From contig NC_091290.1 in NCBI RefSeq assembly GCF_032444005.1, positions 132,122,001 to 132,186,000 on the forward strand: a stretch of DNA of 64,000 bases. Direction: 5' to 3'. This document shows, piece after piece, positions 1 through 36,868 of the stretch. Source of the DNA: Ranitomeya imitator (lineage: Eukaryota). A model generated the notes under the pieces. The model had not been told where the DNA came from. It saw only the letters and a program-made list of their open reading frames with translations, and did no database searches. Every line of letters begins with the position of its first letter. Positions within the stretch are counted from its first letter, which is position 1. A program made the position numbers and the translations under genes.

Positions 1-277
1 TTTACATTTACAACCGTAACCAGGGTAAACATCGGGTTAGTAAGCGCGGCCCTGTGCTTAGTAACCCGATGTTTACCCTGGTTACCAGTGACGACATCGC
101 TGAATCGGCGTCACACACGCCAATTCAGCGAAAAAATAAAGTGCTGGACTTTCCCCAGCGACCAACAATCTCCCAGCAGGGGCCTGATCGTTGGTCGCTG
201 TCACACATAACGATTTAGTTAACGATATCGTTGCTACGTCACATAAAGCAACGATATCGTTATGTGTGACGGTACCC
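1..277. mobile_element. Right part of a PIF/Harbinger-type MITE inserted in a Helitron
   Basis: Ends GTGTGACGGTACCC|TAA, the same terminus type as other TWA-TSD MITEs here. Internal palindrome with 24-bp arms at 16-39 and 62-85. Confidence 0.6.
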
Positions 278-1067
278 TAAGGGTCACTTCCGTCTGCCTG
301 TCACGGAAATCCCAAATCCCGCGTCGGGCACAGTCCGGCCGCGAATTGGCCCCTCCCTTCCCTGTCGTCAGTGCCCACATAGCGTTAAAAAGACTGTCTT
401 ACACTGCGGCATAACGCGGTGTAGGGCACTCCGTTAACGCTACCATTAACCCTCTGTGTGACCAACTTTTTACTATTGATGCTGCCTATGCAGCATCAAT
501 AGTAAAAACATATGGTATTATGTTAAAAAAAATAAAAAAAATTATATACTCACACTCCGACGGCCCCTGGATCCAGCCCAGGCCTTTCCCGCTCCTCGCA
601 CACCGCTCCGGTCCCCGGAATGCATTGCGGCAATGACCGGAGATGACGTAGCGGTCTTGCGAGACTGCTACATCATCACGTGTTATTGCCGCTTGGGATC
701 GGAGCGGCGTGCGAAGAGCAGGAAAGGCCTGGGCTGGATCCGGGGACCGTCGGAGGGTGAGTATATAACTTTTATTTTAATTCTTTTCTTTTTTTAACAG
801 GGATATGGTGCCCACATTGCTATATACTGCGTGGGCAGTGCTATATACTACGTGGGCAGTGCTATATACTACGTGGGCAGTGCTATACACTACGTGGCCG
901 GCCGCGAACAATCAGCGACAGGCGCGGGATTTAAACCACGCTTCGCTAATTGGTCGCGCCCGGCCAGCCGAATTCTTTGTATAAATTGTAATATTCTAAA
1001 ATCTTCGTAAATAAACTACATACATACTCTAGAATACCCGATGCGTTAGAATCAGGCCACCATCTAG
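278..1067 (+). mobile_element. Non-autonomous Helitron family A, copy 1 (about 4 copies of a 21-bp internal repeat)
   Basis: Shares TAAGGGTCACTTCCGTCTG and the TTTTTACTATTGATGCTGC..GCAGCATCAATAGTAAAAA hairpin with the copy at 7005. 3' end has the CCCGAT..ATC(A)GG hairpin then CCACCATCTAG|T. Confidence 0.8.
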
Positions 1068-7004: not shown

Positions 7005-7005
<1 letters not shown>

Positions 7006-8390
7006 CTACTATATAATTGTCTAAGGGTCACTTCCGTCTGTCCTTCTGTCTGTCACAGTTATTCATTCGCTGATTGGTCTCGCCAGCTGCCTGTCATGGC
7101 TGCCGCGACCAATCAGCGACGGGCACAGTCTGGAAGAAAATGGCCGCTCCTTACTCCCCGCAGTCAGTGCCTGTCACCCGCATGCTCCCCTCCGGTCACC
7201 GCTAATACAGGGTTAATGCTGGCGGTAACGGACTGCGTTATGCCGCGGGTAACGCACTCCGTTACTGCCGCTATTAACCCTGTGTGTCCCCAACTTTTTA
7301 CTATTGATGCTGCCTATGCGGCATCAATAGTAAAAAATGTAATGTTTAAAATAATAATAATAAAAAAAACCTGCTATGCTCACCCTCCGTTGCAGCTCGC
7401 GCCGGCCGCCATCTTCCGTTGCAGGTTCCGGTGGCAGAAGGACCTGCCATGACGTCACGGTCATGTGACCGCGACGTCATCACAGGTCCTGCGCTCATAC
7501 CAAACCTGGGACCGGAACCTGCTGTGGACTACAGAGGGCCCTCGGAAAGGTCAGTATATGTTTATTTTTTCACCTGTGACAAACCTGGCTGGGCAATATA
7601 CTACGTAGCTGGGCAATATACTACGTGACTGGCCAATATACTACGTGGCTCTGTGCTGTATACTACGTCACTGGGCAATATACTACGTCACTGGGCAATA
7701 TACTACGTGGCTCTGTGCAATATACTACGTGGCTCTGTGCTGTATACTACTTCGCTGTGCAATATACAACGTGGCTGTGCAATATACTACGTGGCTGGGC
7801 AATATACCACGTGGCTGCGCAATATACTACGTGTCTGGCCAATATATTACGTTACTGGGCAATATACTACATGGCGTGACTGGGCAATATACTACGTGGC
7901 TGGCCAATATATTACGTCACTGGACAATATACTACGTGGCTGGGCAATATACTACGTGGCTGGGCAATATACTACGTGGCTGGGCAATATACTACATGGC
8001 TGGGCAATATACTACGTCGCTGGGCAATATACTACGTGGCTGGGCAATATACTACGTGGCTGGGCAACATACTACGTGGCTGGGCAATATACTACGTCAC
8101 TAGGCAATATACTACGTCACTAGGCAATATACTATGTGGCTGGGCAATATACTACGTCACTAGGCAATATACTACGTCACTAGGCAATATACTATGTGGC
8201 TGGGCAATATACTACGTCACTAGGCAATATACTACGTGTCTGGCCAATATATTACGTCACTGGGCAATATACTACATGGCGTGACTGGGCAATATACTAC
8301 GTGGCTGGCCAATATATTACGTCACTGGACAATATACTACGTGGCTGGCCAATATATTACGTCACTGGGCAATATACTACGTGGCGTGGC
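7005..8390 (+). mobile_element. Helitron family A, copy 2 (3' end missing; about 40 copies of the 20-bp repeat at 7586-8385)
   Basis: Starts A|TCTACTATATAA (Helitron 5' TC); internal hairpin as in copy 1; array unit CTACGTGGCTGGGCAATATA; no CTAG terminus seen. Confidence 0.8.
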
Positions 8391-8797
8391 AATATTATAT
8401 TATATATATTAATCTGGAAAAATTTATAATTTTTCATCCACAGATTTATTATTTGTTGATGTGTAAAAATGAATACATTTACAAGCCGAAACACAGTTTC
8501 CATGTTAAGAATGGCAATGTATCTGTAAAAATGGGATGCTGTACGACTGATCCATATAGGATTTGATTTTTTTCCCCAGAAAAGACAAGTCTAATTTGAA
8601 CGACTAGTGCAAGCTGTGATTTTTTTTTTTTCACAAGAACAAAAAAATATTAAAACACAATAATAATATCTGAACAGTCCTGACATGTGAAAAAAAAATA
8701 TTTGGGCCAATGTTGTTCCATCACATATTCCCCCCCTCCACCCCTAAATACAGTCAAGTAAACATAGGCACAATTCAGGTTAAAATTTCCAGTGTTA

Positions 8798-14240: not shown

Positions 14241-16606
14241 CTAGCTATTGAACCCGTTCTACGCCTGGGTGGCGAGCATTTATATTGGTATATGGTCTCC
14301 ATCCTGGTATGTGCTGCTCCATCCTGCGCCCCCATCCTGTCATGTGCTGCTCCCATCCTGCGCCCCCGTTCTGTCATGTGCTGCTCCCATCCTGCGCCTC
14401 CATTCTGTCATTTGCTGCTCCCATCCTGTCATTTGCTGCTCCCATCCTGCGCCCGTTCTGTCATTTGCTGCTCCCATCCTGCGTCCCCGTTCTGTCATTT
14501 GCTGCTGCCATCCTGCGCCCGTTCTGTCATGTGCTGCTGCCATCCTGCGCCCGTTCTGTCATGTGCTGCTGCCATCCTGCGCCCGTTCTGTCATGTGCTG
14601 CTGCCATCCTGCGCCCGTTCTGTCATGTGCTGCTGCCATCCTGCGCCCGTTCTGTCATGTGCTGCTGCCATCCTGCGCCCGTTCTGTCATGTGCTGCTGC
14701 CATCCTGCGCCCGTTCTGTCATGTGCTGCTGCCATCCTGCGCCCGTTCTGTCATGTGCTGCTCCCATCCTGCGCCCGTTCTGTCATGTGCTGCTGCCATC
14801 CTGCGCCCGTTCTGTCATGTGCTGCTGCCATCCTGCGCCCGTTCTGTCATGTGCTGCTGCCATCCTTCGCCCGTTCTGTCATGTGCTGCTACCATCCTTC
14901 GCCCGTTCTGTCATGTGCTGCGGCCATCCTGCGCCCGTTCTGTCATGTGCTGCGGCCATCCTGCGCCCGTTCTGTCATGTGCTGCTGCCATCCTGCGCCC
15001 GTTCTGTCATGTGCTGCGGCCATCCTGCGCCCGTTCTGACATGTGCTGCTGCCATCCTGCGCCCGTTCTGTCATGTGTTGCGGCCATCCTGCGCCCGTTC
15101 TGTCATGTGCTGCTGCCATCCTGCGCCCGTTCTGTCATGTGCTGCGGCCATCCTGCGCCCGTTCTGACATGTGCTGCTGCCATCCTGCGCCCGTTCTGTC
15201 ATGTGCTGCTGCCATCCTGCGCCCGTTCTGTCATGTGCTGCGGCCATCCTGCGCCCGTTCTGACATGTGCTGCTGCCATCCTGCGCCCGTTCTGTCATGT
15301 GCTGCTGCCATCCTGCGCCCGTTCTGTCATGTGCTGCGGCCATCCTGCGCCCGTTCTGTCATGTGCTGCTGCCATCCTGCGCCCGTTCTGTCATGTGCTG
15401 CTGCCATCCTGCGCCCGTTCTGTCATGTGCTGCGGCCATCCTGCGCCCGTTCTGTCTTGTGCTGCGGCCATCCTGCGCCCGTTCTGTCATGTGCTGCGGC
15501 CATCCTGCGCCCGTTCTGTCATGTGCTGCTGCCATCCTGCGCCCGTTCTGTCATGTGCTGCTGCCATCCTGCGCCCGTTCTGTCATGTGCTGCGGCCATC
15601 CTGCGCCCGTTCTGTCTTGTGCTGCGGCCATCCTGCGCCCGTTCTGTCATGTGCTGCGGCCATCCTGCGCCCGTTCTGTCATGTGCTGCGGCCATCCTGC
15701 GGCCGTTCTGTCATGTGCTGCGGCCATCCTGAGCCCGTTCTGTCATGTGCTGCTGCCATCCTGCGCCCGTTCTGTCATGTGCTGCTGCCATCCTGCGCCC
15801 GTTCTGTCATGTGCTGCGGCCATCCTGCGCCCGTTCTGTCTTGTGCTGCGGCCATCCTGCGCCCGTTCTGTCATGTGCTGCGGCCATCCTGCGCCCGTTC
15901 TGTCATGTGCTGCGGCCATCCTGCGGCCGTTCTGTCATGTGCTGCGGCCATCCTGAGCCCGTTCTGTCATGTGCTGCTGCCATCCTGCGCCCGTTCTGTC
16001 ATGTGCTGCTCCCATCCTGCGCCACCATTGTATTATATGCCCCCCGCTCCAGTGTGTATGCCCCCGAATGCTGCTGCCATATAAAAAAAAAAAAAATACC
16101 ATACTCACCTATCGTCCGGCTCCACTGCAGGTATGTCTTCAAGAAAATGGCGCCGGAAAGCGGGGACTGCGCAGGCGCCGATTCCGGCAGCAGGAATCGG
16201 CGCCTGCGCAGTCCGCGCTTTCCGGCGCCATTTTCTTGAAGACACACCTGCAGTGGAGCCGGAGTGTGTCTTCAAGAAAATGGCGCCGGAAAGCGCGGAC
16301 TGCGCAGGCGCCGATTCCGGCAGCAGGAATCGGTGCCTGCGCAGTCCACGCCCTCCGGAGCCGGGAGCAGAGGAGCCGGGAGACGGAGCCGCAAGCAGCG
16401 CTGGAACCGGGAAAGGTGAGTATACTTACCCTCCCTCCTGGCGGTCCCTGACTCTCCGGTGGAGATCGCGGTGTGCGTTCAGTGCTTACGCATACCGCGA
16501 TCTCCCGGGAGCGTCGCTCTGTGAGGCCCAGACTGCGCCGGCGCTTGCGCTTGCGCAGTCTATAGAGGCTTCGGTCAGAGTGACGCTCCCAGCGTTATAT
16601 TATAGA
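14241..16606 (-). mobile_element. Non-autonomous Helitron family B with a 32-bp internal array
   Basis: Minus strand starts A|TCTATAATATAACGC and ends with the ACCCA/G..CGGGT hairpin then TCAATAGCTAG|T; no TSD. Confidence 0.8.
14310..16022. repeat. 32-bp tandem array (CATCCTGCGCCCGTTCTGTCATGTGCTGCTGC), about 53 copies
   Basis: Visible periodicity; translations repeat every 32 aa (3 units). Confidence 0.95.
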
Positions 16607-20188: not shown

Positions 20189-20344
20189 TATGTGAGAAGG
20201 ACCTGCCATGACGTCACGGTCATGTGACCGAGAAGTCATCACAGGTCCTGCGCTCATACCAACCCTGGAACCGGAAGCTGCCGTGGACTACAGAGGGCCC
20301 TCGGAAAGGAGAGAATATGTTTATTTTTTAAACTGTGACAAACC

Positions 20345-23300
20345 TGGCTGGGCAATATACTACGTAGCTGAGCAATATACTACGTAGCTGGGCAATATAC
20401 TACGTGGCTGGGCAATATGCTACGTAGTTGGGCAATATAATATGTGACTGGCCAATATACTACGTGGCTCTGTGCTGTATACTACGTCACTGGGCAATAT
20501 ACTACGTTACTGGGCAATATACTACGTTACTGGGCAATAAACTACGTGGCTGGCCAATATACTACGTGGCTGCGCAATATACTACGTGGCTCTGTGCTGT
20601 ATACTATGTAACTGGGCAATATACTACGTGGCTGGGCAATATACTACGTGACTGGGCAATATACTACGTGGCTGGGCAATATACTACGTGGCTGGGCAAT
20701 ACACTATGTGGCTCTGCTATATACTATGTGGCTCTGCTATATACTATGTGGCTGAGCAATATACTACGTGGCTGGGCAATATACTACGTGGCTGGGCAAT
20801 ATACTACGTGGCTGGGCAATATACTCACGTGGCTGGGCAATATACTACGTGGCTCTGTGCTGTATACTACGTAACTGGGCAATATACTACTGGGCAATAT
20901 ACTACGTGGCTGGGCAATATACTACGTGGCTGGGCAATATACTACGTGACTGGGCAATATACTACGTGACTGGGCAATATACTACGTGACTGGGCAATAT
21001 ACTACGTGACTGGGCAATATACTACGTGACTGGGCAATATACTACGTGGCTGGGCAATATACTACGTGACTGGGCAATATGCTACGTAGCTGGGCAATAT
21101 ACTACGTGACTGGGCAATATACTACGTGACTGGGCAATATACTACGTGGCTGGGCAATATACTACGTGACTGGGCAATATACTACGTGGCTGGGTAATAT
21201 ACTACGTGGCTGGGCAATATACTACGTGACTGGGCAATATACTACGTGGCTGGGCAATATACTACGTGTCTGGGCAGTATACTACGTGACTGGGCAATAT
21301 ACTATGTGGCTGGGCAATATACTACGTGGCTGGGCAGTATGCTACGTGACTGGGCAGTATACTACGTGTCTGGGCAGTATACTACGTGACTGGGCAGTAT
21401 ACTACGTGGCTGGGCAATATACTACGTGGCTGGGCAATATACTACGTGACTGGGCAATATACTACGTGACTGGGCAATATACTACGTGACTGGGCAATAT
21501 ACTACGTGGCTGGGCAATATACTACGTGACTGGGCAATATACTACCCGGATATTAACTGGGAAACAGAAACCTGTGAAACCCATAAAGGCAACAGGTTTC
21601 TGCTAATAACCAAGAAAAATTATCTTTCACAATTGGTGCAGAATCCAACCAGAGGAGCAGCACTTTTAGACCTAATACTATCTAATAGACCTGACAGAAT
21701 AACAAATCTGCAGGTGGTTGGGCATCTAGGAAATAGCGACCACAATATTGTACAGTTTCACCTGTCTTTCACTAGGGGGACTTGTCAGGGAGTCACAAAA
21801 ACACTGAACTTTAGGAAGGCAAAGTTTGACCAGCTTAGAGATGCCCTTAATCTGGTAGACTGGGACAATATCCTCAGAAATAAGAATACAGATAATAAAT
21901 GGGAAATGTTTAAGAACATCCTAAATAGGCAGTGTAAGCGGTTTATACCTTGTGGGAATAAAAGGACTAGAAATAGGAAAAACCCAATGTGGCTAAACAA
22001 AGAAGTAAGACAGGCAATTAACAGTAAAAAGAAAGCATTTGCACTACTAAAGCAGGATGGCACCATTGAAGCTCTAAAAAACTATAGGGAGAAAAATACT
22101 TTATCTAAAAAACTAATTAAAGCTGCCAAAAAGGAAACAGAGAAGCACATTGCTAAGGAGAGTAAAACTAATCCCAAACTGTTCTTCAACTATATCAATA
22201 GTAAAAGAATAAAAACTGAAAATGTAGGCCCCTTAAAAAATAGTGAGGAAAGAATGGTTGTAGATGACGAGGAAAAAGCTAACATATTAAACACCTTCTT
22301 CTCCACGGTATTCACGGTGGAAAATGAAATGCTAGGTGAAATCCCAAGAAACAATGAAAACCCTATATTAAGGGTCACCAATCTAACCCAAGAAGAGGTG
22401 CGAAATCGGCTAAATAAGATTAAAATAGATAAATCTCCGGGTCCGGATGGCATACACCCACGAGTACTAAGAGAACTAAGTAATGTAATAGATAAACCAT
22501 TTTTTCTTATTTTTAGGGACTCTATAGCGACAGGGTCTGTTCCGCAGGATTGGCGCATAGCAAATGTGGTGCCAATATTCAAAAAGGGCTCTAAAAGTGA
22601 ACCTGGAAATTATAGGCCAGTAAGTCTAACCTCTATTGTTGGTAAAATATTTGAAGGGTTTCTGAGGGATGTTATTCTGGATTATCTCAATGAGAATAAC
22701 TGTTTAACTCCATATCAGCATGGGTTTAAGAGAAATCGCTCCTGTCAAACCAATCTAATCAGTTTTTATGAAGAGGTAAGCTATAGACTGGACCACGGTG
22801 AGTCATTGGACGTGGTATATCTCGATTTTTCCAAAGCGTTTGATACCGTGCCGCACAAGAGGTTGGTACACAAAATGAGAATGCTTGGTCTGGGGGAAAA
22901 TGTGTGTAAATGGGTTAGTAACTGGCTTAGTGATAGAAAGCAGAGGGTGGTTATAAATGGTAGAGTCTCTAACTGGGTCGCTGTGACCAGTGGGGTACCG
23001 CAGGGGTCAGTATTGGGACCTGTTCTCTTCAACATATTCATTAATGATCTGGTAGAAGGTTTACACAGTAAAATATCGATATTTGCAGATGATACAAAAC
23101 TATGTAAAGCAGTTAATACAAGAGAAGATAGTATTCTGCTACAGATGGATCTGGATAAGTTGGAAACTTGGGCTGAAAGGTGGCAGATGAGGTTTAACAA
23201 TGATAAAAATAAGGTTATACACATGGGAAGAAGGAATCAATATCACCATTACACACTGAACGGGAAACCACTGGGTAAATCTGACAGGGAGAAGGACTTG

Positions 23301-26300
23301 GGGATCCTAGTTAATGATAAACTTACCTGGAGCAGCCAGTGCCAGGCAGCAGCTGCCAAGGCAAACAGGATCATGGGGTGCATTAAAAGAGGTCTGGATA
23401 CACATGATGAGAGCATTATACTGCCTCTGTACAAATCCCTAGTTAGACCGCACATGGAGTACTGTGTCCAGTTTTGGGCACCGGTGCTCAGGAAGGATAT
23501 AATGGAACTAGAGAGAGTACAAAGGAGGGCAACAAAATTAATAAAGGGGATGGGAGAACTACAATACCCAGATAGATTAGCGAAATTAGGATTATTTAGT
23601 CTAGAAAAAAGACGACTGAGGGGCGATCTAATAACCATGTATAAGTATATAAGGGGACAATACAAATATCTCGCTGAGGATCTGTTTATACCAAGGAAGG
23701 TGACGGGCACAAGGGGGCATTCTTTGCGTCTGGAGGAGAGAAGGTTTTTCCACCAACATAGAAGAGGATTCTTTACTGTTAGGGCAGTGAGAATCTGGAA
23801 TTGCTTGCCTGAGGAGGTGGTGATGGCGAACTCAGTCGAGGGGTTCAAGAGAGGCCTGGATGTCTTCCTGGAGCAGAACAATATTGTATCATACAATTAT
23901 TAGGTTCTGTAGAAGGACGTAGATCTGGGTATTTATTATGATGGAATATAGGCTGAACTGGATGGACAAATGTCTTTTTTCGGCCTTACTATGTTACTAT
24001 GTTACTACGTGACTGGGCAATATACTACGTGTCTGGGCAGTATACTACGTGACTGGGCAGTATACTACGTGTCTGGGCAGTATACTACGTGGCTGGGCAA
24101 TATACTACGTGTCTGGGCAGTATACTACGTGACTGAGCAATATACTACGTGTCTGGGCAGTATACTACGTGGCTGGGCAATATACTACGTGGCTGGGCAA
24201 TATACTACGTGACTGGGCAATATACTACGTGACTGGGCAATATACTACGTGACTGGGCAATATACTACGTGGCTGGGCAATATACTACGTGACTGGGCAA
24301 TATACTACGTGGCTGGGCAATATACTACGTGACTGGGCAATATACTACGTGGCTGGGCAATATACTACGTCGCTGGGCAATATACTACGTGACTGGGCAA
24401 TATACTACGTGACTGGGCAATATACTACGTGGCTGGGCAATATACTACGTGGCTGGGCAATATAGTACGTGACTGGGCAATATACTACGTGGCTGGGCAG
24501 TATACTACGTGGCTGGGCAATATACTACGTGACTGGGCAATATAGTACGTGACTGGGCAATATACTACGTGACTGGGCAATATACTACGTGGCTGGGCAA
24601 TATACTACGTGACTGGGCAATATACTATGTGGCTGGGCAATATACTACGTGACTGGGCAATATACTACGTGACTGGGCAATATACTACGTGACTGGGCAA
24701 TATACTACGTGACTGGGCAATATACTACGTGGCTGGGCAATATACTACGTGACTGGGCAATATACTACGTGACTGGGCAATATAGTACGTGACTGGGCAA
24801 TATCGTGGCTGGGCAATATACTACGTGGCTGGGCAATATACTACGTGACTGGGCAATATACAACGTGACTGGGCAATATACTACGTGACTGGGCAATATA
24901 CTACATGACTGGGCAATATACTACGTGGCTGGGCAATATAGTACGTGACTGGGCAATATACTACGTGGCTGGGCAATATAGTACGTGACTGGGCAATATA
25001 CTACGTGGCTGGGCAATATACTACGTGGCTGGGCAATATACTACGTGGCTGGGCAATATACTACGTGACTGGGCAATATAGTACGTGACTGGGCAATATA
25101 CTACGTGGCTGGGCAGTATACTACGTGACTGGGCAATATACTACGTGGCTGGGCAATATACTACGTGACTGGGCGATATAGTACGTGACTGGGCAGTATA
25201 CTACGTGGCTGGGCAGTATACTACGTGGCTGGGCAATATACTACGTGACTGGGCAATATAATACGTGACTGGGCAATATACTACGTGACTGGGCAATATA
25301 CTACGTGGCTGGGCAATATACTACGTGGCTGGGCAATATACTACGTGGCTGGGCAATATACTACGTGGTTGGGCAATATACTACGTGGCTGGGCAATATA
25401 CTACGTGACTGGGCAATATACTACGTGACTGGACAATATACTACGTGGCTGGGCAATATACTACGTGGCTGGGCAATATACTACGTGACTGGGCAATATA
25501 CTACGTGGCTGGGCAATATACTACGTGTCTGGGCAGTATACTACGTGACTGGACAATATACTACGTGGCTGGGCAATATACTACGTGGCTGGGCAATATA
25601 CTACGTGACTGGGCAATATAGTACGTGGCTGGGCAATATACTACGTGACTGGACAATATACTACGTGGCTGGGCAATATACTACGTGACTGGGCAATATA
25701 CTACGTGACTGGGCAATATACTACGTGGCTGGGCAATATACTACGTGACTGGGCAATATACTACGTGACTGGGCAATATACTACATAGCTGGGCAATATA
25801 CTACATGGCTGGGCAATATACTACGTGGCTGGGCAATATACTACGTGACTGGGCAATATACTACGTGACTGGACAATATACTACGTGGCTGGGCAATATA
25901 CTACGTGGCTGGGCAATATACTACGTGACTGGGCAATATACTACGTGGCTGGGCAATATACTACGTGTCTGGGCAGTATACTACGTGACTGGACAATATA
26001 CTACGTGGCTGGGCAATATACTACGTGGCTGGGCAATATACTACGTGACTGGGCAATATAGTACGTGGCTGGGCAATATACTACGTGCCTGGACAATATA
26101 CTACGTGGCTGGGCAATATACTACGTGACTGGGCAATATACTACGTGACTGGGCAATATACTACGTGGCTGGGCAATATACTACGTGACTGGGCAATATA
26201 CTACGTGGCTGGGCAATATACTACGTGACTGGGCAATATACTACGTGGCTGGGCAATATACTACGTGACTGGGCAATATACTACGTGACTGGGCAATATA

Positions 26301-29300
26301 GTACGTGACTGGGCAATATACTACGTGACTGGGCAATATACTACGTGGCTGGGCAATATACTACGTGGCTGGGCAATATACTACGTGGCTGGGCAATATA
26401 CTACGTGGTTGGGCAATATACTACGTGGCTGGGCAATATACTACGTGACTGGGCAATATACTACGTGACTGGACAATATACTACGTGGCTGGGCAATATA
26501 CTACGTGGCTGGGCAATATACTACGTGACTGGGCAATATACTACGTGGCTGGGCAATATACTACGTGTCTGGGCAGTATACTACGTGACTGGACAATATA
26601 CTACGTGGCTGGGCAATATACTACGTGGCTGGGCAATATACTACGTGACTGGGCAATATAGTACGTGGCTGGGCAATATACTACGTGACTGGACAATATA
26701 CTACGTGGCTGGGCAATATACTACGTGACTGGGCAATAAACTACGTGACTGGGCAATATACTACGTGGCTGGGCAATATACTACGTGACTGGGCAATATA
26801 CTACGTGACTGGGCAATATACTACATAGCTGGGCAATATACTACGTGGCTGGGCAATATACTACGTGGCTGGGCAATATACTACGTGACTGGGCAATATA
26901 CTACGTGACTGGACAATATACTACGTGGCTGGGCAATATACTACGTGACTGGGCAATATACTACGTGGCTGGGCAATATACTACGTGTCTGGGCAGTATA
27001 CTACGTGACTGGACAATATACTACGTGGCTGGGCAATATACTACGTGGCTGGGCAATATACTACGTGACTGGGCAATATAGTACGTGGCTGGGCAATATA
27101 CTACGTGACTGGACAATATACTACGTAACTGGGCAATATACTACGTGACTGGGCAATATACTACGTGGCTGGGCAATATACTACGTGACTGGGCAATATA
27201 CTACGTGACTGGGCAATATACTACGTGACTGGGCAATATACTACGTGGCTGGGCAATATACTACGTGACTGGGCAATATACTACGTGACTGGGCAATATA
27301 CTACATAGCTGGGCAATATACTACGTGGCTGGGCAATATACTACGTGGCTGGGCAATATACTACGTGACTGGGCAATATACTACGTGGCTGGGCAATATA
27401 CTACGTGACTGGGCAATACACTACGTGACTGGGCAATATACTACGTGGCTGGGCAATATACTACGTGACTGGGCAATATACTACGTGACTGGGCAATATA
27501 CTACGTGACTGGGCAATATACTACGTGACTGGGCAATATACTACGTGGCTGGGCAATATACTACGTGGCTGGGCAATATACTACGTGGCTGGGCAATATA
27601 CTACGTGGCTGGGCAATATACTACGTGACTGGGCAATATAGTACGTGACTGGGCAATATACTACGTGACTGGGCAATATACTACGTGGCTGGGCAATATA
27701 CTACGTGGCTGGGCAATATACTACGTGACTGGGCAATATACTACGTGGCTGGGCAATATACTACGTGGCTAGGCAATATACTACGTGACTGGGCAATATA
27801 GTACGTGACTGGGCAATATACTACGTGACTGGGCAATATACTACGTGGCTGGGCAATATACTACGTGACTGGGCAATATACTACGTGACTGGGCAATATA
27901 CTACGTGACTGGGCAATATACTACGTGGCTGGGCAATATACTACGTGGCTGGGCAATATACTACGTGGCTGGGCAATATACTACGTGACTGGGCAATATA
28001 GTACGTGACTGGGCAATATACTACGTGACTGGGCAATATACTACGTGGCTGGGCAATATACTACGTGGCTGGGCAATATACTACGTGACTGGGCAATATA
28101 CTACGTGGTTGGGCAATATACTACGTGACTGGGCAATATAGTACGTGGCTGGGCAATATACTACGTGACTGGACAATATACTACGTGACTGGACAATATA
28201 CTACGTGGCTGGGCAATATACTACGTGACTGGGCAATATAGTACGTGACTGGGCAATATACTACGTGGCTGGGCAATATACTACGTGGCTGGGCAATATA
28301 CTACGTGGCTGGGCAATATACTACGTGGTTGGGCAATATACTACGTGGCTGGGCAATATACTACGTGACTGGGCAATATACTACGTGACTGGACAATATA
28401 CTACGTGGCTGGGCAATATACTACGTGGCTGGGCAATATACTACGTGACTGGGCAATATACTACGTGGCTGGGCAATATACTACGTGTCTGGGCAGTATA
28501 CTACGTGACTGGACAATATACTACGTGGCTGGGCAATATACTACGTGGCTGGGCAATATACTACGTGACTGGGCAATATAGTACGTGGCTGGGCAATATA
28601 CTACGTGACTGGACAATATACTACGTGGCTGGGCAATATACTACGTGACTGGGCAATATACTACGTGACTGGGCAATATACTACGTGGCTGGGCAATATA
28701 CTACGTGACTGGGCAATATACTACGTGACTGGGCAATATACTACATAGCTGGGCAATATACTACATGGCTGGGCAATATACTACGTGGCTGGGCAATATA
28801 CTACGTGACTGGGCAATATACTACGTGACTGGACAATATACTACGTGGCTGGGCAATATACTACGTGGCTGGGCAATATACTACGTGACTGGGCAATATA
28901 CTACGTGGCTGGGCAATATACTACGTGTCTGGGCAGTATACTACGTGACTGGACAATATACTACGTGGCTGGGCAATATACTACGTGGCTGGGCAATATA
29001 CTACGTGACTGGGCAATATAGTACGTGGCTGGGCAATATACTACGTGCCTGGACAATATACTACGTGGCTGGGCAATATACTACGTGACTGGGCAATATA
29101 CTACGTGACTGGGCAATATACTACGTGGCTGGGCAATATACTACGTGACTGGGCAATATACTACGTGGCTGGGCAATATACTACGTGACTGGGCAATATA
29201 CTACGTGGCTGGGCAATATACTACGTGACTGGGCAATATACTACGTGACTGGGCAATATAGTACGTGACTGGGCAATATACTACGTGACTGGGCAATATA

Positions 29301-31507
29301 CTACGTGGCTGGGCAATATACTACGTGGCTGGGCAATATACTACGTGGCTGGGCAATATACTACGTGGTTGGGCAATATACTACGTGGCTGGGCAATATA
29401 CTACGTGACTGGGCAATATACTACGTGACTGGACAATATACTACGTGGCTGGGCAATATACTACGTGGCTGGGCAATATACTACGTGACTGGGCAATATA
29501 CTACGTGGCTGGGCAATATACTACGTGTCTGGGCAGTATACTACGTGACTGGACAATATACTACGTGGCTGGGCAATATACTACGTGGCTGGGCAATATA
29601 CTACGTGACTGGGCAATATAGTACGTGGCTGGGCAATATACTACGTGACTGGACAATATACTACGTGGCTGGGCAATATACTACGTGACTGGGCAATAAA
29701 CTACGTGACTGGGCAATATACTACGTGGCTGGGCAATATACTACGTGACTGGGCAATATACTACGTGACTGGGCAATATACTACATAGCTGGGCAATATA
29801 CTACGTGGCTGGGCAATATACTACGTGGCTGGGCAATATACTACGTGACTGGGCAATATACTACGTGACTGGACAATATACTACGTGGCTGGGCAATATA
29901 CTACGTGACTGGGCAATATACTACGTGGCTGGGCAATATACTACGTGTCTGGGCAGTATACTACGTGACTGGACAATATACTACGTGGCTGGGCAATATA
30001 CTACGTGGCTGGGCAATATACTACGTGACTGGGCAATATAGTACGTGGCTGGGCAATATACTACGTGACTGGACAATATACTACGTAACTGGGCAATATA
30101 CTACGTGACTGGGCAATATACTACGTGGCTGGGCAATATACTACGTGACTGGGCAATATACTACGTGACTGGGCAATATACTACGTGACTGGGCAATATA
30201 CTACGTGGCTGGGCAATATACTACGTGACTGGGCAATATACTACGTGACTGGGCAATATACTACATAGCTGGGCAATATACTACGTGGCTGGGCAATATA
30301 CTACGTGGCTGGGCAATATACTACGTGACTGGGCAATATACTACGTGGCTGGGCAATATACTACGTGACTGGGCAATACACTACGTGACTGGGCAATATA
30401 CTACGTGGCTGGGCAATATACTACGTGACTGGGCAATATACTACGTGACTGGGCAATATACTACGTGACTGGGCAATATACTACGTGACTGGGCAATATA
30501 CTACGTGGCTGGGCAATATACTACGTGGCTGGGCAATATACTACGTGGCTGGGCAATATACTACGTGGCTGGGCAATATACTACGTGACTGGGCAATATA
30601 GTACGTGACTGGGCAATATACTACGTGACTGGGCAATATACTACGTGGCTGGGCAATATACTACGTGGCTGGGCAATATACTACGTGACTGGGCAATATA
30701 CTACGTGGCTGGGCAATATACTACGTGGCTAGGCAATATACTACGTGACTGGGCAATATAGTACGTGACTGGGCAATATACTACGTGACTGGGCAATATA
30801 CTACGTGGCTGGGCAATATACTACGTGACTGGGCAATATACTACGTGACTGGGCAATATACTACGTGACTGGGCAATATACTACGTGGCTGGGCAATATA
30901 CTACGTGGCTGGGCAATATACTACGTGGCTGGGCAATATACTACGTGACTGGGCAATATAGTACGTGACTGGGCAATATACTACGTGGCTGGGCAATATA
31001 CTACGTGGCTGGGCAATATACTACGTGACTGGGCAATATACTACGTCACTAGGCAATATACTACGTGGCTGGGCAATATACTACGTGGCTGGGCAATATA
31101 CTACGTGACTGGGCAATATACTACGTGGCTGGGCAATATACTACGTGGCTGGGCAATATACTACGTGGCTGGGCAATATACTACGTGACTGGGCAATATA
31201 GTACGTGACTGGGCAATATACTACGTGGCTGGGCAATATACTACGTGACTGGGCAATATTCTACGTGACTGGGCAATATACTACGTCACTAGGCAATATA
31301 CTACGTGGCTGGGCAATATACTACGTGACTGGGCAATATACTACGTGACTGGGCAATATACTACGTGGCTGGGCAATATACTACGTGGCTGGGCAATATA
31401 CTACGTGACTGGGCAATATAGTACGTGACTGGGCAATATACTACGTGACTGGACAATATACTACGTGACTGGGCAATATACTACGTGGCTGGGCAATATA
31501 CTACGTG
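20345..31507. repeat. 20-bp satellite CTACGTG(G/A)CTGGGCAATATA, about 435 copies (20345-21545 and 24003-31507)
   Basis: Directly visible strict 20-bp period. Confidence 0.97.
21546..24002 (+). mobile_element. 5'-truncated CR1 LINE with an uninterrupted ORF2 remnant (21546-23903)
   Basis: End of endonuclease (YPDINWE, LDLILSN, GNSDH), full RT ([38 protein letters not shown]), 3' UTR and (TTACTATG)n tail; TACTAC on both flanks. Confidence 0.95.
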
Positions 31508-31890
31508 GACATGCATATTCTAGAATACCGGATGCGTTAGAATCGGGCCACCATCTAGTATAACATAAGCTGGGACCTGTTGTACCATATAACATAAACT
31601 GGAACTTGTAGTACCACATATACAGATGCTGGGATCTGTAGTACCATCTACGTAGTGTTTACGCCCAATACTTGCCAGTTTTACCTCACAAAACCCAGTA
31701 ATTATGAGGACTAACCTTCCTGCCTCTTTATAACGTTACTACTATAGAGCGCTGTGCACAGTGCACACTGTACACCGCCGCCATTACTATCGGTTACCTC
31801 AACTACAGCACGTATTCGTAACGTATTGGGAGTGGGACATACCAAGTATGTTTGTAGAACCCCCCCCCCTTCCCTTTGGACTATTCCGGT

Positions 31891-32031
31891 CACATGATCT
31901 AATTTTCCCGCGAAATCCGACTTCCACGCTGCGTTCTATTCAGGACCGTGGACCAATCGCAGAGCTCGCAGTCGGTGACGTCACGCCCCGGGGCTCTCTG
32001 CACTCAGCGCTGAGGCTGTAGTGTTTCGCGG
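31891..32031 (+). promoter_or_regulatory. CDT1 proximal promoter with E2F, CCAAT and CRE motifs
   Basis: Overlapping two-way E2F site TTTTCCCGCGAAA (31903-31915), CCAAT (31953-31957), TGACGTCA (31976-31983), TTTCGCGG (32024-32031). CDT1 is a known E2F target. Confidence 0.7.
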
Positions 32032-32055
32032 GTGTTCGCTGTGTGAGGGGGCGAC

Positions 32056-35000
32056 ATGGAGCAGATGAGAGTTACCGATTACTTCGGGCAGCGGAAGCGG
32101 CCAGCAGCACGAGGGAACCCGGGGACTAAACGGAGGAAGGTGCAGGAGGCGGTGAAGTTAGAAGACTTGCTGCGGCCGCCCAGCACTCCGGAGCAGCCCG
32201 AGCCGCCTGTTCCCTTCTCCCTCCTTCCCAGCAGCAAGAAGCGGGGCCGGCAGCACTCAGACCCGGAGGTGACGGGCAAGAGGTCCGCGCGGAAGAAGCT
32301 GAAGCTCCCCGAAGAGGAGCCCCAGGTACGCCGCCATGTTTAATGTGGGCACCGGTGCAGCCAATCAGATTCCAGCTTTCATTTTGTCACATGAAAGCTG
32401 CATTCTGATTGGCTGTTCTCTGCACTTCCTGTTTTTTTTTTTTTTGCAGCACAAGGCCTGAGTGTACTTCCTGTGAGGGCACCAGGTGGTCACATAGGGG
32501 CAGACCCCTCCCCGTGCCCCATAGAAAACTAAGGGACCTCTGCCTAGGATTAAAATTGGGTGCAGAGGAAAAATAAAGTTATTTGTCTCAAAAAATAAAT
32601 AGCCATATGATGTCTAGGGGTCTAATCATAATGGAGGGTCTGCAATTTTTGGGTCCCAGTTACAGCCTCTAGAAGTGTACAGAGCAGTGTTAGAGGTGGC
32701 AGCGCTCACTGAGTGCCCTGCAGACATCTGATCTGTGGGGTGAGGGGGTCTCTGTGGGTCGGACCCCTGCTTATCTAGTAATGATTGCCCACCCTATGTA
32801 TCTGCCATCCATATTAAAATCCTAGTAAGTTCTGGACGCACAGCATGAGCAGTTAGTCGCCATATTTAAAGGTGTAGTGTTAAGTTTGGAAGCCATACCT
32901 GGGAGTCTAATTGACCCTGACAATCGGGTGTTATTATACTACTGTATGGAGCCCATGATCGACCTCCTCTCCATTAACACGGGACTCTTCAGAGCCTCAG
33001 TCCTCAGGATTGGTGGGGGGTCTCATTGGTCGTACCCCCAATGATCAGGAAGTTATCTCCCATCATATAGAAAGGATATAACTTACAAACATGAGTATAT
33101 CCCAGGTCCGGATACATTGATGACTTTTCCATAGGTCATTAATATCAGATTGGTCGGGGGTGGCAACATTTGGCTGCCCCACTGATCATCTGCTGCAAGC
33201 ACTGTAGGGGCCACTGCTAAATACTGCGGAACAGCTCCTATCCTATAGATGGATATTAGTACTGTATATCCTGTCTTAAAAATCCCTTTAAATAAAAGGA
33301 GAATCTAATCGATTTTTTTTTTTCTTCTCTCCCTTCACCCCCAGTGTTTGAGTCCTTGCTCCAAAACAGAAGTCCAACATGAGACACCTTCATCTTTGGG
33401 GAAGAAAATAAAGGACTTTGTCAATGTGTCTCTGTCTCCCCAAAGTGGCACACTGCAGATCGGTCTGGCAGTGCCAGAGGCGAAGGTAAGTGGCAGGAAT
33501 GGGACATAGACCAAATCTATACAGCGAGAAAGGGGTTAAGCAGACTTGACAAATGAGTATCGGCACAACCCCTTTGAAGCTTTTGGTGACTTGCGCTTCT
33601 TTTTGCAATAAATGTATTTTTTGGCAGAGTTCTGTAATGGATTTGCGTTGTCACTGCTGCAACATGTGAACATGTCCAAAATAAAAATAGTTTATCACAT
33701 TACTATATAGATTGGTCTTCCTAAAACAGTAAGTGCATGGACTTCAACATCCGGCCCTCTCAGAGCACGTTGAAACTCCTACAAAGTGCTGTATCTGTGT
33801 AGTGGCTGTTTTGGGGTAATGCAGCTCGGCTCCTTATCACTTCAATGGGACCTGAGCTACAGTATTAAAGAACAGTCACTACACCGTGTGCAGGGCTGTG
33901 CTGTCCTGGCTCCATACACTCTGTACACCCAGCTGCCTGATTAGTGGGGAGTGTCATGGGTCATAATTAAGCCCCTGATGACCCCTTTAATGTGTTCTCT
34001 TGCTTTATTGATGCACCTTTCATGCTATTTCTTGCATCCAGGTTTCATCCAAGGAGAATCTGGATCTAAAATCTCGATTGCAGAAGATACAGGAGCTCGG
34101 TCAAAGACTAAAAGTTCCTGCTGCTCCACTCGAGAGCAAAGTTACAATCACAGACTTAAAGACAAGACTCAAACAAGCACAAGCCCTCGAGTCCAAGATC
34201 AGGGAGAGGAAAGCCGAGAAGCAGATAGTCGAGCATCAACAGGAGCCAAACAGGGAAAGGTGAGACGTTCCAGGAAGATTTGTGGATTCTGTGACTTGTA
34301 GTGTTGGATCTTTCTCAATAACAGCCTCCTATAGTAGGGTCTTTCCAGGCAGGTCACCATTCCTCCTGTCTTGCAGTGAGAAGGCTCCGGCCTATGAGCG
34401 ATTCCACACCCTCGCCCAGGATGTTCCGCCTGGACTGTCGCTACCTTTCAGGTACAAAGTGTTGGCAGAAATGTTCCGCAGCATGGACACCATTGTCGGG
34501 ATGCTCTGCAACCGATCTGAGACCGTCACCTTCTCCAAAGTGAAGCAGGGAGTCCAGGACATGATGCGCAAGTGAGTATTATATTTCTATTCACACATTA
34601 GAACCATAAACTATAGACCTGTCATATTTAAAAATAAAAAAATACCATTTTTTTTTCTGTATCTTGCAGACAGTTTGAGGAACGTAACGTTGGACAGATT
34701 AAAACCGTTTACCCGACGGCCTACAAGTTTAGACAGGAGAAGAATATTCCCACCTTCAAGAATGGCGAGAAGAAGTCGGATTATCATCTCACTGTGGAGC
34801 CGATTGTTCCGGAAGGTGAATTGTTAATTTTATAATGTGGATGTCTGACTTCTGACATTACTTGACGATTTCTTAAAGTGAGTCTGTTACCCCCCAAAAT
34901 GAAAAATTCAGCTACTTAAACATTTATATAGGGGACTTAGCCCCAGTAATATACATTTTAGTGTTGTATTTGCTGAAACATTTACTTTTTTATCTATATG

Positions 35001-36868
35001 CCAATGTTGGAGCTTCAGTTCACCATTACATCTTCCGTTACCTTATCTTGATTGACAGCGCTCACTTTCTCACAGCAAGATGCCTTTACTCAAATCTCTG
35101 GTCCTGCACGTGCACCCTAACATTGTAGGTGCCCCGTAGTGTGGAATCTGAGCGGAGGTCGCCCCCGGAGCTCTGGTTCATGTCTGCAGCATCAGGAGTA
35201 GAAATTGGCATCCATAGACTGGCACTAAAGTGCATTTTGGGGGGTGACAAACTCTCTTTAAAATGTGGACTTTTCGTTCTTGCCTGTTCTGACACTTCTT
35301 AATATCTTGATCTTGTAGAGGATAAATTGGACGGTCGCCTTCAGCTCACTGCGAGTCGCCTCCTGGAGCGCAGGAAGTTCTTCCATAGAAGCCTTACTGA
35401 TATCGTGAAGCAGCACCACAGAGTAAGTGCTGGGTGCTGTGCACATGCCTGCGCCATATTACTACACTTCCAGAATCTAATCTTCTCCTGTCCCATCCTA
35501 TAGTCTTTCTTGGAGACATTGAATCCCCCCATGGTGGTGCCTGACTATCAGCTGACCCGCTGGCACCCCCGATTTAACGTTGATGAAGTCCCAGATGTCG
35601 TGGCAGCTGAACTTCCACAACCGCCCCAAGTGCAAAAGCTAAGCACCGCACAGGAGGTGCTGACTAAAGCTAGAGGATTGATGACCCCGAAGGTGAGTCT
35701 TGAGCTAATTTATTTCCTTTGTTCTGTGCATATTTCTTTATTGTATTTAATTATGTGCACAACTTTTACCTCTTATCTGCAGATGGAAAAGGCCCTGGCA
35801 GATTTAGCTTTAAGAAATGCAGAGACCAATGCTGAAGACACAAAGCCTGCACCTTCAGCAGAGCCTAAACCTGCTGCTGCTGCACCCAGTGCCCTGAAAG
35901 GAGTGTCCCAGTCCTTACTGGAAAGGGTAGGTATAGTTTAGAGAATGCATTTTCCTAACAATGGTCCAGCGGTCACGTTGGCAGTTGGAGAGAAGTCCTG
36001 TATAATAGCTTCCTACCTGCTGGAATCTCTGGTGCCTCTTCTAATTTATTTACCACCGGTGTAATGCACACACATCATATCGGGCCTACTCGTCGGATAA
36101 CAGCAGATGGGTGGGAACTCGGGACTCTCCTGACGACCGCTGGACCAGGGTTTTGCTCAGCATAGTCTTGAAGAATTCTATCCTAGGAGTGTCCAGTCTG
36201 TAATGCTCTCTGCTTTTTAGATACGTGCTAAAGAGGCGCAGAAGCTTCAAGCCATTATGACCCGTAAACCCCAGCAAGAAGAACGTCTCCTTATGATGTC
36301 CAGGCTCCCGGAGCTTGCCCGCATCCTGCGTAATGTGTTTGTGGCAGAGAAGAAGCCAGCCCTGACTGCAGAAGTTGTGTGCGACCGTATAATCTCCAGT
36401 TACCGATCTTCAATGTCAGCAGGTATGGAAAAGATTCATCAATGGTGTTCGGCTTAGGCTATAAAATCAGTGGGGGGGGGGGGGGGGGGGATACACCTTA
36501 CTGATGCCAGAACATTAACATCCAAAGGGTGGAAACCCCTTTCCATCTGACAAAGGTGCAGAATACAGCATCGTGCACCTTATATCAGATGGTTCTGGGA
36601 TATGTCATGGTTTTTGTTCACTAATGGCAATCTGAGATCTTGCATATGGCATTGATGATTTGGTCTGATGTCACCCTTGTTTTTTTTTTTTTTTGCCCCC
36701 GTAGGAGAAATGGAGAAACATCTGTCGTTACTGGTGGAGCTGCTCCCAGGCTGGCTCACCATTCATCCCATCAGGAAGGATACTTACTACAAACTCAACA
36801 AGACAACGGACTTGAATCTGATTTTGGAAAGACTGGACAAAAAAATGAAGGAAGAGTCGTCTCACTAA
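32056..36868 (+). CDS. CDT1: DNA replication licensing factor Cdt1, 10 exons: 32056-32325, 33345-33485, 34042-34259, 34377-34571, 34670-34815, 35319-35422, 35504-35692, 35783-35926, 36221-36422, 36705-36868 (1773 nt, 590 aa)
   Basis: N-terminal PIP degron [12 protein letters not shown] (TD motif, basic residue at +4), Cy-like ARKKLKL, geminin-binding region EKAPAYERF...[20 protein letters not shown] motif, C-terminal winged helix [18 protein letters not shown]. All introns GT-AG with matching phases; ends in TAA. Confidence 0.96.
34877..35257. mobile_element. TTAA-target MITE in CDT1 intron 5
   Basis: TTAA|AGTGAGTCTGTTACCCCCC ... GGGGGGTGACAAACTCTCT|TTAA. Confidence 0.7.

What the first reader, a model, noticed from the sequence alone, without database searches (positions are those of the whole stretch)
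20195..31558. Helitron-to-satellite transition visible in one window: about 4, 40 and 435 repeat units
Seen: three copies of Helitron family A carry the same internal repeat at very different sizes (about 4 units at 818-897, about 40 at 7586-8385, about 435 at 20345-31507). The largest array is still closed by the Helitron 3' hairpin and CTAG|T at 31558, 498 bp before the CDT1 ATG. Established: TE-internal tandem repeats can found satellite DNA. Inference: a mobile satellite-seeding system in this lineage that inflates gene-dense, euchromatic intergenic DNA.
Basis: partly seen in the sequence, partly recalled or inferred. Interest (0 to 1): 0.75.

Follow-up and report, generated by a model that had tools for sequence, protein, structure and literature searches.

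The report
Helitron-borne 20-bp repeat array expansion
A broken copy of a small rolling-circle transposon (Helitron) just upstream of the frog CDT1 gene carries its family's built-in 20-base repeat blown up to about 435 copies; this is a clear vertebrate example of a process already well documented in flies, oysters and clawed frogs.

Summary
The sequence facts hold. A 20-bp unit forms arrays of 39.7 units (7586-8395) and 60 + 375.5 units (20345-21545, 24003-31507). A related 21-bp unit forms 3.8 units at 818-897. The big array ends in a Helitron 3' terminus (CTAG|T at 31558), 497 nt before the CDT1 ATG.

Corrections:
- The big array is split by a young 2,457-bp LINE fragment.
- It lacks the Helitron 5' end, because homology starts abruptly at 20195. 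Copy 2 lacks the 3' end.
- Copy 1 belongs to a diverged subfamily, so 4-40-435 is not a simple series.
- 148 of the 435 units are an exact 2,746-bp internal duplicate, either very recent or an assembly artefact.

Contigs from public runs show that the terminus and the unit are extremely abundant in this species and in a relative about 4% diverged. They also place the mobile boundary exactly at CTAG|T and show that the family-majority sequence forms a proper 3' hairpin.

The array has an old ~25-unit core shared with copy 2 and a young, homogenised remainder built by nested multi-unit duplications. That fits in-situ growth by unequal exchange.

Helitron-borne arrays seeding satellites are well known, and the scan already noted another satellite-filled Helitron on other DNA of this genome. 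Verdict: new member of a known kind.

The parts
277..1067 (+). Family A copy 1, a diverged subfamily. Shared 5' block starts at 277; the first ~16 nt of the putative 5' end are missing. Includes the 21-bp x3.8 array at 818-897 and a 3' terminus ending in CTAG at 1067, followed by T.
7005..8395 (+). Family A copy 2. Putative 5' end A|TCTACTATATAATTG at 7005, body to 7585, then a 20-bp x39.7 array at 7586-8395. No 3' terminus; it breaks into AT-rich unrelated DNA.
20195..20344 (+). Copy 3, the internal left flank of the array. It is 92.7% identical to 7436-7585 of copy 2. The Helitron 5' part that corresponds to 7005-7435 is absent.
20345..21545 (+). Copy 3 array, proximal part (60 units). The first ~25 units are old and colinear with copy 2's array; the rest are of the young homogenised type.
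21546..24002 (+). 5'-truncated non-LTR retrotransposon inserted in register into the array. It has an open 785-codon frame with an RVT_1 domain and a (TACTATGT)n tail abutting the TACTACGT of the unit.
24003..31507 (+). Copy 3 array, distal part (375.5 units, 94% matches). Two variants (GTGG and GTGA) make up 73% of units. It contains nested perfect multi-unit duplications.
25282..28027 (+). First copy of the exact 2,746-bp internal duplication. The second copy is at 28242-30987, a lag of 2,960 bp (148 units).
28242..30987 (+). Second copy of the exact 2,746-bp internal duplication.
31496..31558 (+). Conserved family 3' terminal region (ATATACTACGTGG...). The hairpin arms are at 31528-31533 and 31543-31548, with the left arm mutated at 31530 in this copy. 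It ends in CTAG at 31558, and T at 31559 is the first host base.
14241..16606 (-). Family B, a complete non-autonomous Helitron that supports the general pattern. It has A|TCTATAATATAACG at the 5' end, GC-rich palindromes, GGTGAGTAT, a T-run, a 32-bp x50 array, and GCGTAGAACGGGTTCAATAGCTAG|T at the 3' end.
32015..36423 (+). CDT1 gene. The 5' end of the RNA contig is at about 32015, the ATG at 32056, and exon 1 runs to 32319. Spliced exons are confirmed by RNA contigs.

Best explanation
Family A is a very abundant non-autonomous canonical Helitron of a poison-frog-type genome. Its standard layout places a 20-22-bp minisatellite directly upstream of the ~63-bp 3' terminal region.

The unit's 13-nt core (ATATACTACGTGG) is itself part of that terminal region. 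The repeat therefore probably arose from the element's own sequence and not by capture (inferred).

One copy inserted 0.5 kb upstream of CDT1 carrying a short, heterogeneous array like copy 2's (inferred). It later lost its 5' ~430 bp (shown). Its array then grew in place to about 290-435 units through repeated out-of-register exchange or replication restart that duplicated blocks of 18 to 148 units (pattern shown, mechanism inferred). During this growth a LINE retrotransposed into the array, probably primed on the unit by its similar 3' tail (inferred).

The expanded copy has a broken 5' end and a mutated hairpin. It is now an immobile, locally evolving satellite-like array and not an active seeder.
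For: Helitron identity
- The terminus ends in CTAG followed by T at both 3' ends.
- 236+102+163 contigs of organism A and 148 of organism B diverge into mutually unlike AT-rich flanks exactly after 31559.
- 89-98% of family contig depth reads C at 31530, which gives a 6-bp CCCGAT/ATCGGG hairpin (-6.1 kcal/mol, z -2.7) ending 10 nt before CTAG.
- A|TC followed by a TA-rich 5' end is seen in copy 2 and in complete family B. This matches the amphibian Helitron ends described in PMC12001565.

The array is cargo
- Copies 2 and 3 share an identical left junction, shared 22-bp variant units and whole-unit indels.

Growth in place and recent
- The first ~25 units have 2.0 differences per unit and 5 of 25 CpGs decayed.
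- The other ~410 units have 0.1-0.6 differences per unit and about 97% of CpGs intact.
- Perfect repeats are nested at lags of 360, 420-440, 600, 1,040, 1,920 and 2,960 bp.

LINE
- It was inserted in register, and young-type units lie on both sides of it.
- Its ORF is open over 785 codons, with RVT_1 at 2.9e-33.

Intrinsic origin of the unit
- 45 contigs (organism A), 19 (organism B) and 3 (X8) carry the terminal region from 31496 onward, preceded by a different but mutually consistent sequence instead of the array.
Against: - No contig bridges 31558 at this locus and no long reads were available, so neither the array length nor the junctions have independent support.
- The exact 2,746-bp duplicate, with a non-matching 12-unit spacer, is not what a single clean unequal crossover produces. 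It could be an assembly error.
- The family A 5' end rests on one copy in the window.
- No empty site was found.
- Growth in place cannot be separated from insertion of an already large array, because the orthologous site in the relative was not recovered: its contig stops at 31605.
Confidence: 0.72

Rival explanations
1. The array length is inflated by the assembly. The 2,960-bp lag duplication (148 units) is a mis-join or over-expansion of a repeat, and the true array has about 287 units or fewer.
For: 25282-28027 and 28242-30987 have zero differences over 2,746 bp, while the array elsewhere varies at about 6% of positions. The two copies are separated by 12 units that match neither flank, which is untidy for a simple tandem duplication. 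Only short-read contigs were available, so there is no spanning support.
Against: Shorter perfect duplications at many lags (200-437 bp perfect runs at lags of 360-1,920 bp) show that the same process acts at smaller scales. A very recent large event is therefore plausible. Even without this duplicate, the array is still about 287 units.
Confidence: 0.2
2. The element transposed to this site already carrying a very large array. Expansion happened in a master copy elsewhere, not in place.
For: The unit is enormously abundant in contigs of two species, so other large arrays probably exist. An 8.4-kb Helitron filled with a 27-bp repeat was noted on another piece of this genome (finding s1-279654, not checked here).
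Against: The flank of copy 3 is about 7% diverged from copy 2, whereas the distal array is nearly free of CpG decay and contains zero-difference duplicates. Much of the array is therefore far younger than the insertion. The literature reports an inverse relation between array length and mobility (PMC7492417, citing Scalvenzi and Pollet).
Confidence: 0.12
3. The repeat is an independent satellite. Helitron pieces merely inserted into it, or recombined with it, on one side.
For: Copies 2 and 3 each have a family terminus on one side only. Such one-sided arrays are known as intermediates in oysters (PMC12628747).
Against: Both copies share the same non-repeat left junction and the same first variant units at unrelated loci. 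The array's last unit merges into the conserved terminal region, which itself begins with the unit core. No array of this unit occurs in the window away from family A sequence.
Confidence: 0.05

Closest known systems
Cg_HINE non-autonomous Helentrons of the Pacific oyster carrying satellite-like central repeats, including Cg170/HindIII (PMC7492417, PMC8268682, PMC12628747)
   Same: - Conserved ends with a central tandem array in fixed orientation.
- Related flanks that carry different arrays, as families A and B do here.
- Dispersal through gene-rich DNA.
- One-sided 'intermediate' arrays.
   Different: - Those are Helentrons: they insert in oligo-T and have subterminal inverted repeats.
- Their monomers are 140-180 bp, and arrays are mostly under 5 units, with a maximum of 29.
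- Here the ends are canonical Helitron ends (A|TC...CTAG|T), the unit is 20 bp, and one array reaches hundreds of units.
DINE-1 / DINE-TR1 of Drosophila, whose internal repeats expanded into satellite DNA (Dias et al. 2015, cited in PMC12628747 and PMC7492417)
   Same: An internal tandem repeat of a rolling-circle element is found both as short element-borne arrays and as long expanded arrays.
   Different: It is an insect Helentron with a ~150-bp unit, and its long arrays lie mainly in heterochromatin. Here the long array sits 0.5 kb from an expressed housekeeping gene.
Heli2Xen / Helitron-N2_XT of Xenopus, made largely of 166-bp minisatellites, and Heli1Xen1 with TC...hairpin...CTAG ends (PMC12001565)
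   Same: These are frog Helitrons whose non-autonomous copies consist mostly of minisatellite arrays. The canonical amphibian end structure, TC followed by a TA-rich stretch and a hairpin followed by CTAG, matches what is seen here.
   Different: The minisatellite-bearing Xenopus family is of the Helitron2 type with 166-bp units and few copies per array. The hairpin sequence differs (CCCGTTA/TAACGGG there, CCCGAT/ATCGGG here). No sequence relationship was tested.
Xenopus MITE-borne tandem repeats that seed satellites (Hikosaka and Kawahara 2004; Scalvenzi and Pollet model, both cited in PMC12628747 and PMC7492417)
   Same: In frogs, a short TE-internal repeat grows into arrays. The model predicts that long arrays go with loss of mobility, as in the truncated copy 3 here.
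   Different: Those are terminal-inverted-repeat elements, not rolling-circle elements.

Membership tests
Canonical Helitron (Helitron1), non-autonomous | 3' end CTRR, with the next host base T | tested here: met
   CTAG|T at 1067 and at 31558. Several hundred contigs of two species diverge right after 31559. Family B also ends in CTAG|T at 14241.
Canonical Helitron (Helitron1), non-autonomous | Short GC-rich hairpin about 10-12 nt upstream of the 3' end | tested here: met
   It is weak in both window copies. The family-majority base C at 31530 (89-98% of contig depth) gives a 6-bp stem CCCGAT/ATCGGG, -6.1 kcal/mol, z -2.7, ending 10 nt before CTAG.
Canonical Helitron (Helitron1), non-autonomous | 5' end TC, preceded by host A | tested here: inconclusive
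   Copy 2 reads A|TCTACTATATAATTG at 7005 and family B reads A|TCTATAATATAACG at 16606. For family A this rests on one copy. Copy 1 starts 16 nt further in, next to another repeat, and copy 3 has no 5' end.
Canonical Helitron (Helitron1), non-autonomous | No terminal inverted repeats and no target-site duplication | tested here: met
   The flanks of family B (ATACCA | TTTCTT) and of the family A ends show no duplication, and the two ends are not inverted copies of each other (by reading).
Canonical Helitron (Helitron1), non-autonomous | Empty-site evidence of insertion, and a matching autonomous Rep/helicase partner | not testable with these tools
   The rest of this genome cannot be searched here. 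The relative's contig stops at 31605, before the junction. Two metagenome scans were blank.
Helentron / HINE (DINE-1-like) | Insertion between T and T, subterminal inverted repeats, and a stem-loop downstream of the 3' subTIR | tested here: not met
   The ends are A|TC...CTAG|T, and no inverted match was seen between the 5' and 3' regions. It works like a HINE as a carrier of arrays but is not a member.
Satellite DNA (in the classical sense) | Long homogeneous tandem arrays of one unit, abundant in the genome | tested here: inconclusive
   Locally there are 8.7 kb at 89-94% matches. Abundance: 133,096 contigs were laid in organism A, and summed contig depth is about 10^6 times the unique flank in two species. 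The tool states that this is not a copy number. The genome-wide distribution of array sizes and their chromosomal location are unknown.

The most novel reading that the evidence does not exclude
Family A and its relatives may be among the most abundant Helitrons of any vertebrate, of the order of 10^5-10^6 termini per genome. They may also be the main source of a 20-bp satellite shared by at least two poison-frog species, with arrays that keep growing next to active promoters. Here that puts more than 400 TACGTG (ACGT-core) motifs 0.5 kb from the CDT1 start. This would be the first canonical (Helitron1-type) vertebrate system in which satellite birth can be followed locus by locus.
Probability: 0.3. 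Interest if true: 0.55.

Novelty: new member of a known kind. Interest (0 to 1): 0.3.

Why it matters
It gives a well-resolved vertebrate example of how a transposon's built-in short repeat becomes a kilobase-scale array. An old core is shared with a sister copy, a young part is built by nested block duplications, and an interrupting LINE serves as a time marker.

It also helps explain why about 31% of this gene-dense window is tandem repeat, which bears on how large frog genomes inflate.

It does not reveal a new mechanism. The route from Helitron or Helentron to satellite is established in flies and bivalves, and minisatellite-filled Helitrons are already described in frogs.

Tried and rejected
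- A fuzzy-regex tiling of the units failed to tile the arrays. It was replaced by a greedy register-keeping tiler.
- A plain lag autocorrelation over the whole distal array hid the 2,960-bp duplication. The variant-string approach found it.
My reading of that flank as a Tc1-like transposase fragment is therefore unverified.
- A generic hairpin + CTRR|T scan of the window was not informative: 9 mostly unrelated hits.
As the tool advised, I laid the part beside it, keeping only the last ~9 units.
- All runs were assembled contigs, so read depth, spanning reads and array-length genotyping were impossible.
- Metagenome scans for the terminus and for a unit dimer were blank.
- Look-ups of earlier findings by sequence were blank.
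- Helentron membership was considered and rejected on end structure.
- Rolling-circle tandemisation of whole truncated Helitrons (Xiong et al. model, in PMC12628747) was rejected, because the repeated unit is 20 bp and not an element with repeated 5' ends.
- The N runs at 47607-47736 and 47944-48137 were left untouched.
- CDT1 was searched exon by exon only; the joined model was not searched.
Full report
**What is there**

- 818-897: 21-bp unit, 3.8 copies.
- 7586-8395: 20-bp unit TGGCTGGGCAATATACTACG, 39.7 copies, 83% matches.
- 20345-21545: 60 copies.
- 24003-31507: 375.5 copies, 94% matches.

The last two total 8,706 bp, or 435.3 units. The 12-nt core ATATACTACGTG occurs 363 times in the window against 0 expected, and only at these three sites.

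The 2,457 bp between the two large pieces (21546-24002) is a 5'-truncated non-LTR retrotransposon:
- It has one open frame of 785 codons, with RVT_1 at 2.9e-33 and a weak endonuclease remnant.
- The array is in register across it. TACTAC ends the left part and begins the right part.
- Its (TACTATGT)n tail abuts the near-identical TACTACGT of the unit.

**The carrier element**

A window self-comparison and motif searches define family A.
- The shared 5' block CTAAGGGTCACTTCCGTCTG occurs only at 277 and 7021.
- The 3' terminus GATGCGTTAGAATC(G/A)GGCCACCATCTAG occurs only at 1040-1067 and 31531-31558, each followed by T.
- Copy 1 therefore has both ends, copy 2 only the 5' end, and copy 3 only the 3' end.

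Copy 3 matches the interior of copy 2 only from 20195 (= 7436). Identity over the 150 non-repeat bases is 92.7%. Upstream of 20195 lies unrelated DNA. Copy 2 breaks into AT-rich DNA after 8395.

Copy 1 is a diverged subfamily. It is 73-79% identical in the body, has a different GC-rich palindrome module, and its 21-bp unit is about 80% like the 20-mer.

**Is it a Helitron?**

In both window copies the putative 3' hairpin folds no better than shuffles. Contigs from public runs settled the matter. All runs were contigs only.
- At 31530, 89% (organism A), 93% (organism B) and 96-98% (two RNA runs) of the piled-up family depth reads C instead of G.
- With C, the terminus forms a 6-bp CCCGAT/ATCGGG stem at -6.1 kcal/mol (z -2.7), ending 10 nt before CTAG. 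The values for copies 3 and 1 are -2.4 and -1.0 kcal/mol.
- Several hundred contigs (236+102+163 in A, 148 in B) run through the terminus and then diverge into mutually unlike AT-rich sequence right after 31559. That is a sharp mobile boundary at CTAG|T.

At the 5' side, copy 2 reads A|TCTACTATATAATTG at 7005.

A second, complete element on the minus strand (family B, 16606 to 14241) reads A|TCTATAATATAACG at its 5' end and GCGTAGAACGGGTTCAATAGCTAG|T at its 3' end. It has the same internal order: GC-rich palindromes, GGTGAGTAT, a T-run, then a 32-bp x50 array.

These ends match the canonical amphibian Helitron pattern of TC followed by TATATAAA, and a hairpin followed by CTAG (PMC12001565). 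Helentron features were not seen. The 5' end of family A itself rests on one copy, and no empty site could be obtained.

**The array is cargo and probably home-grown**

Copies 2 and 3 share the same junction ACAAACC|TGGCTGGGC and the same first units. These include odd 22-bp variants (CTCTGTGCTGTA), and the two arrays differ by whole-unit indels. An ancestral array therefore moved with the element.

At the other end, the last unit merges into the terminal region ATATACTACGTGGACATGC.... In 45 (A), 19 (B) and 3 (X8) contigs, that region from 31496 onward is preceded by a different, mutually consistent sequence instead of the array. The unit core is thus native to the 3' region. This favours origin from the element's own sequence (inference).

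**How the big array grew**
- The first ~25 units average 2.0 differences from the two main variants. Five of 25 have a decayed CpG, and several differ in length.
- The other ~410 units average 0.1-0.6 differences, with about 97% of CpGs intact.
- Coding units as variant letters shows recurring multi-unit motifs.
- Perfect repeats occur at lags of 360, 420-440, 600, 1,040 and 1,920 bp, in runs of 200-437 bp.
- One block of 2,746 bp (25282-28027) is repeated without a single difference at 28242-30987, a lag of 148 units, with 12 non-matching units between.

This hierarchy is what repeated out-of-register exchange or replication restart produces. The mechanism is inferred.

Young-type units lie on both sides of the LINE, and the LINE still has an open frame. 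Expansion therefore began before a recent LINE insertion and continued after it.

The largest duplicate could also be an assembly error. Without it the array has about 287 units. Nothing available here could test that.

**Abundance and spread**

In one search, 133,096 contigs of organism A matched the stretch. Summed contig depth was about 1.8x10^7 over the array and 5.3x10^6 at 31530, against about 8 over unique CDT1 DNA. For organism B the figures were 2.8x10^6 and 3.0x10^6 against about 7.5. Organism B's genomic contigs differ from the window by about 4%.

The tool warns that this is not a copy number, so I take it only as 'very abundant in both species'. The window's own density, two family A termini per 64 kb, points to the same order of magnitude.

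The two RNA runs carry spliced CDT1 contigs with GT..AG joints, so CDT1 is expressed. The contig 5' end is at about 32015, 456 nt from the Helitron end. The RNA runs also hold the repeat at high depth.

CDT1 identity was confirmed exon by exon (PF08839, PF16679). The joined model was not searched.

**Comparison with what is known**
- The review PMC12628747 calls expansion of internal arrays of Helitron/Helentron elements a common route to satellite DNA. It also describes intermediate arrays with Helitron parts on one side only, which fits copies 2 and 3.
- PMC7492417 documents oyster Helentron carriers in which related flanks hold different arrays, as families A and B do here. It also cites a Xenopus model in which long arrays go with loss of mobility, which fits truncated copy 3.
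- PMC12001565 describes frog Helitrons made largely of minisatellites.
- I found no paper on this in poison frogs.
- The scan itself has already noted a Helitron filled with a 27-bp satellite on other DNA of this genome (s1-279654), and related cases (s1-288233). I did not check those.

**Verdict**

It is a new member of a known kind. Interest is modest.

Noticed in passing
window 14241-16606 (minus strand): A complete 2,366-bp non-autonomous Helitron of a second family with canonical A|TC...CTAG|T ends. It carries a 32-bp x50 array (14415-16023) in the same position as family A's array, after long GC-rich palindromes, GGTGAGTAT and a T-run.
   Followed up: partly
window 23975-24010 and 21540-21550: The LINE's 3' tail (TACTATGT)n is nearly identical to the TACTACGT of the array unit at the insertion point. 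This suggests microhomology-primed reverse transcription, which would make the array a field of hundreds of potential landing sites.
   Followed up: no
window, whole: Twelve tandem arrays add up to 19,674 bp, or 30.7% of this gene-dense window (CDT1 and GALNS region). They include 34-bp x79 (43333-45972), 39-bp x37 (49153-50560) and 29-bp x92 (59271-61937).
   Followed up: partly
window 46362 (+), 47400 (-), 62449 (-): Further Helitron-like 3' ends: ...CATCATCTAG|T about 390 bp after the 34-bp array, and two ...GCGCCATCTAG|T ends on the minus strand. No matching 5' ends were identified. The element at 47400 runs into the N gaps, which I left alone.
   Followed up: no
window 20345-31507: The array holds 402 copies of TACGTG (417 ACGT cores), ending 456 nt upstream of the 5' end of the CDT1 RNA contig. 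ACGT-core motifs are binding cores for several transcription-factor classes. Any effect on CDT1 is pure speculation.
   Followed up: no
window 31320-31560 (RNA runs X18 and X8): Two runs that carry spliced CDT1 contigs also hold the 20-bp repeat and the Helitron terminus at roughly 1,000-fold the CDT1 contig depth. The repeat therefore reaches RNA somewhere in the genome, or DNA is present in those libraries.
   Followed up: no
window 32198: Organism B (genomic) and organism C (RNA) contigs carry a 9-nt in-frame insertion (CGAGCGCAG) in CDT1 exon 1 relative to the window.
   Followed up: no
window 7440-7500 and 16130-16400: Both Helitron families carry long, near-perfect GC-rich palindromes with TGACGTCA-like cores just upstream of a splice-donor-like GGT(G/C)AGTAT. 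This is the promoter-like, first-exon-like module that another note on this genome (s1-294823) described.
   Followed up: partly
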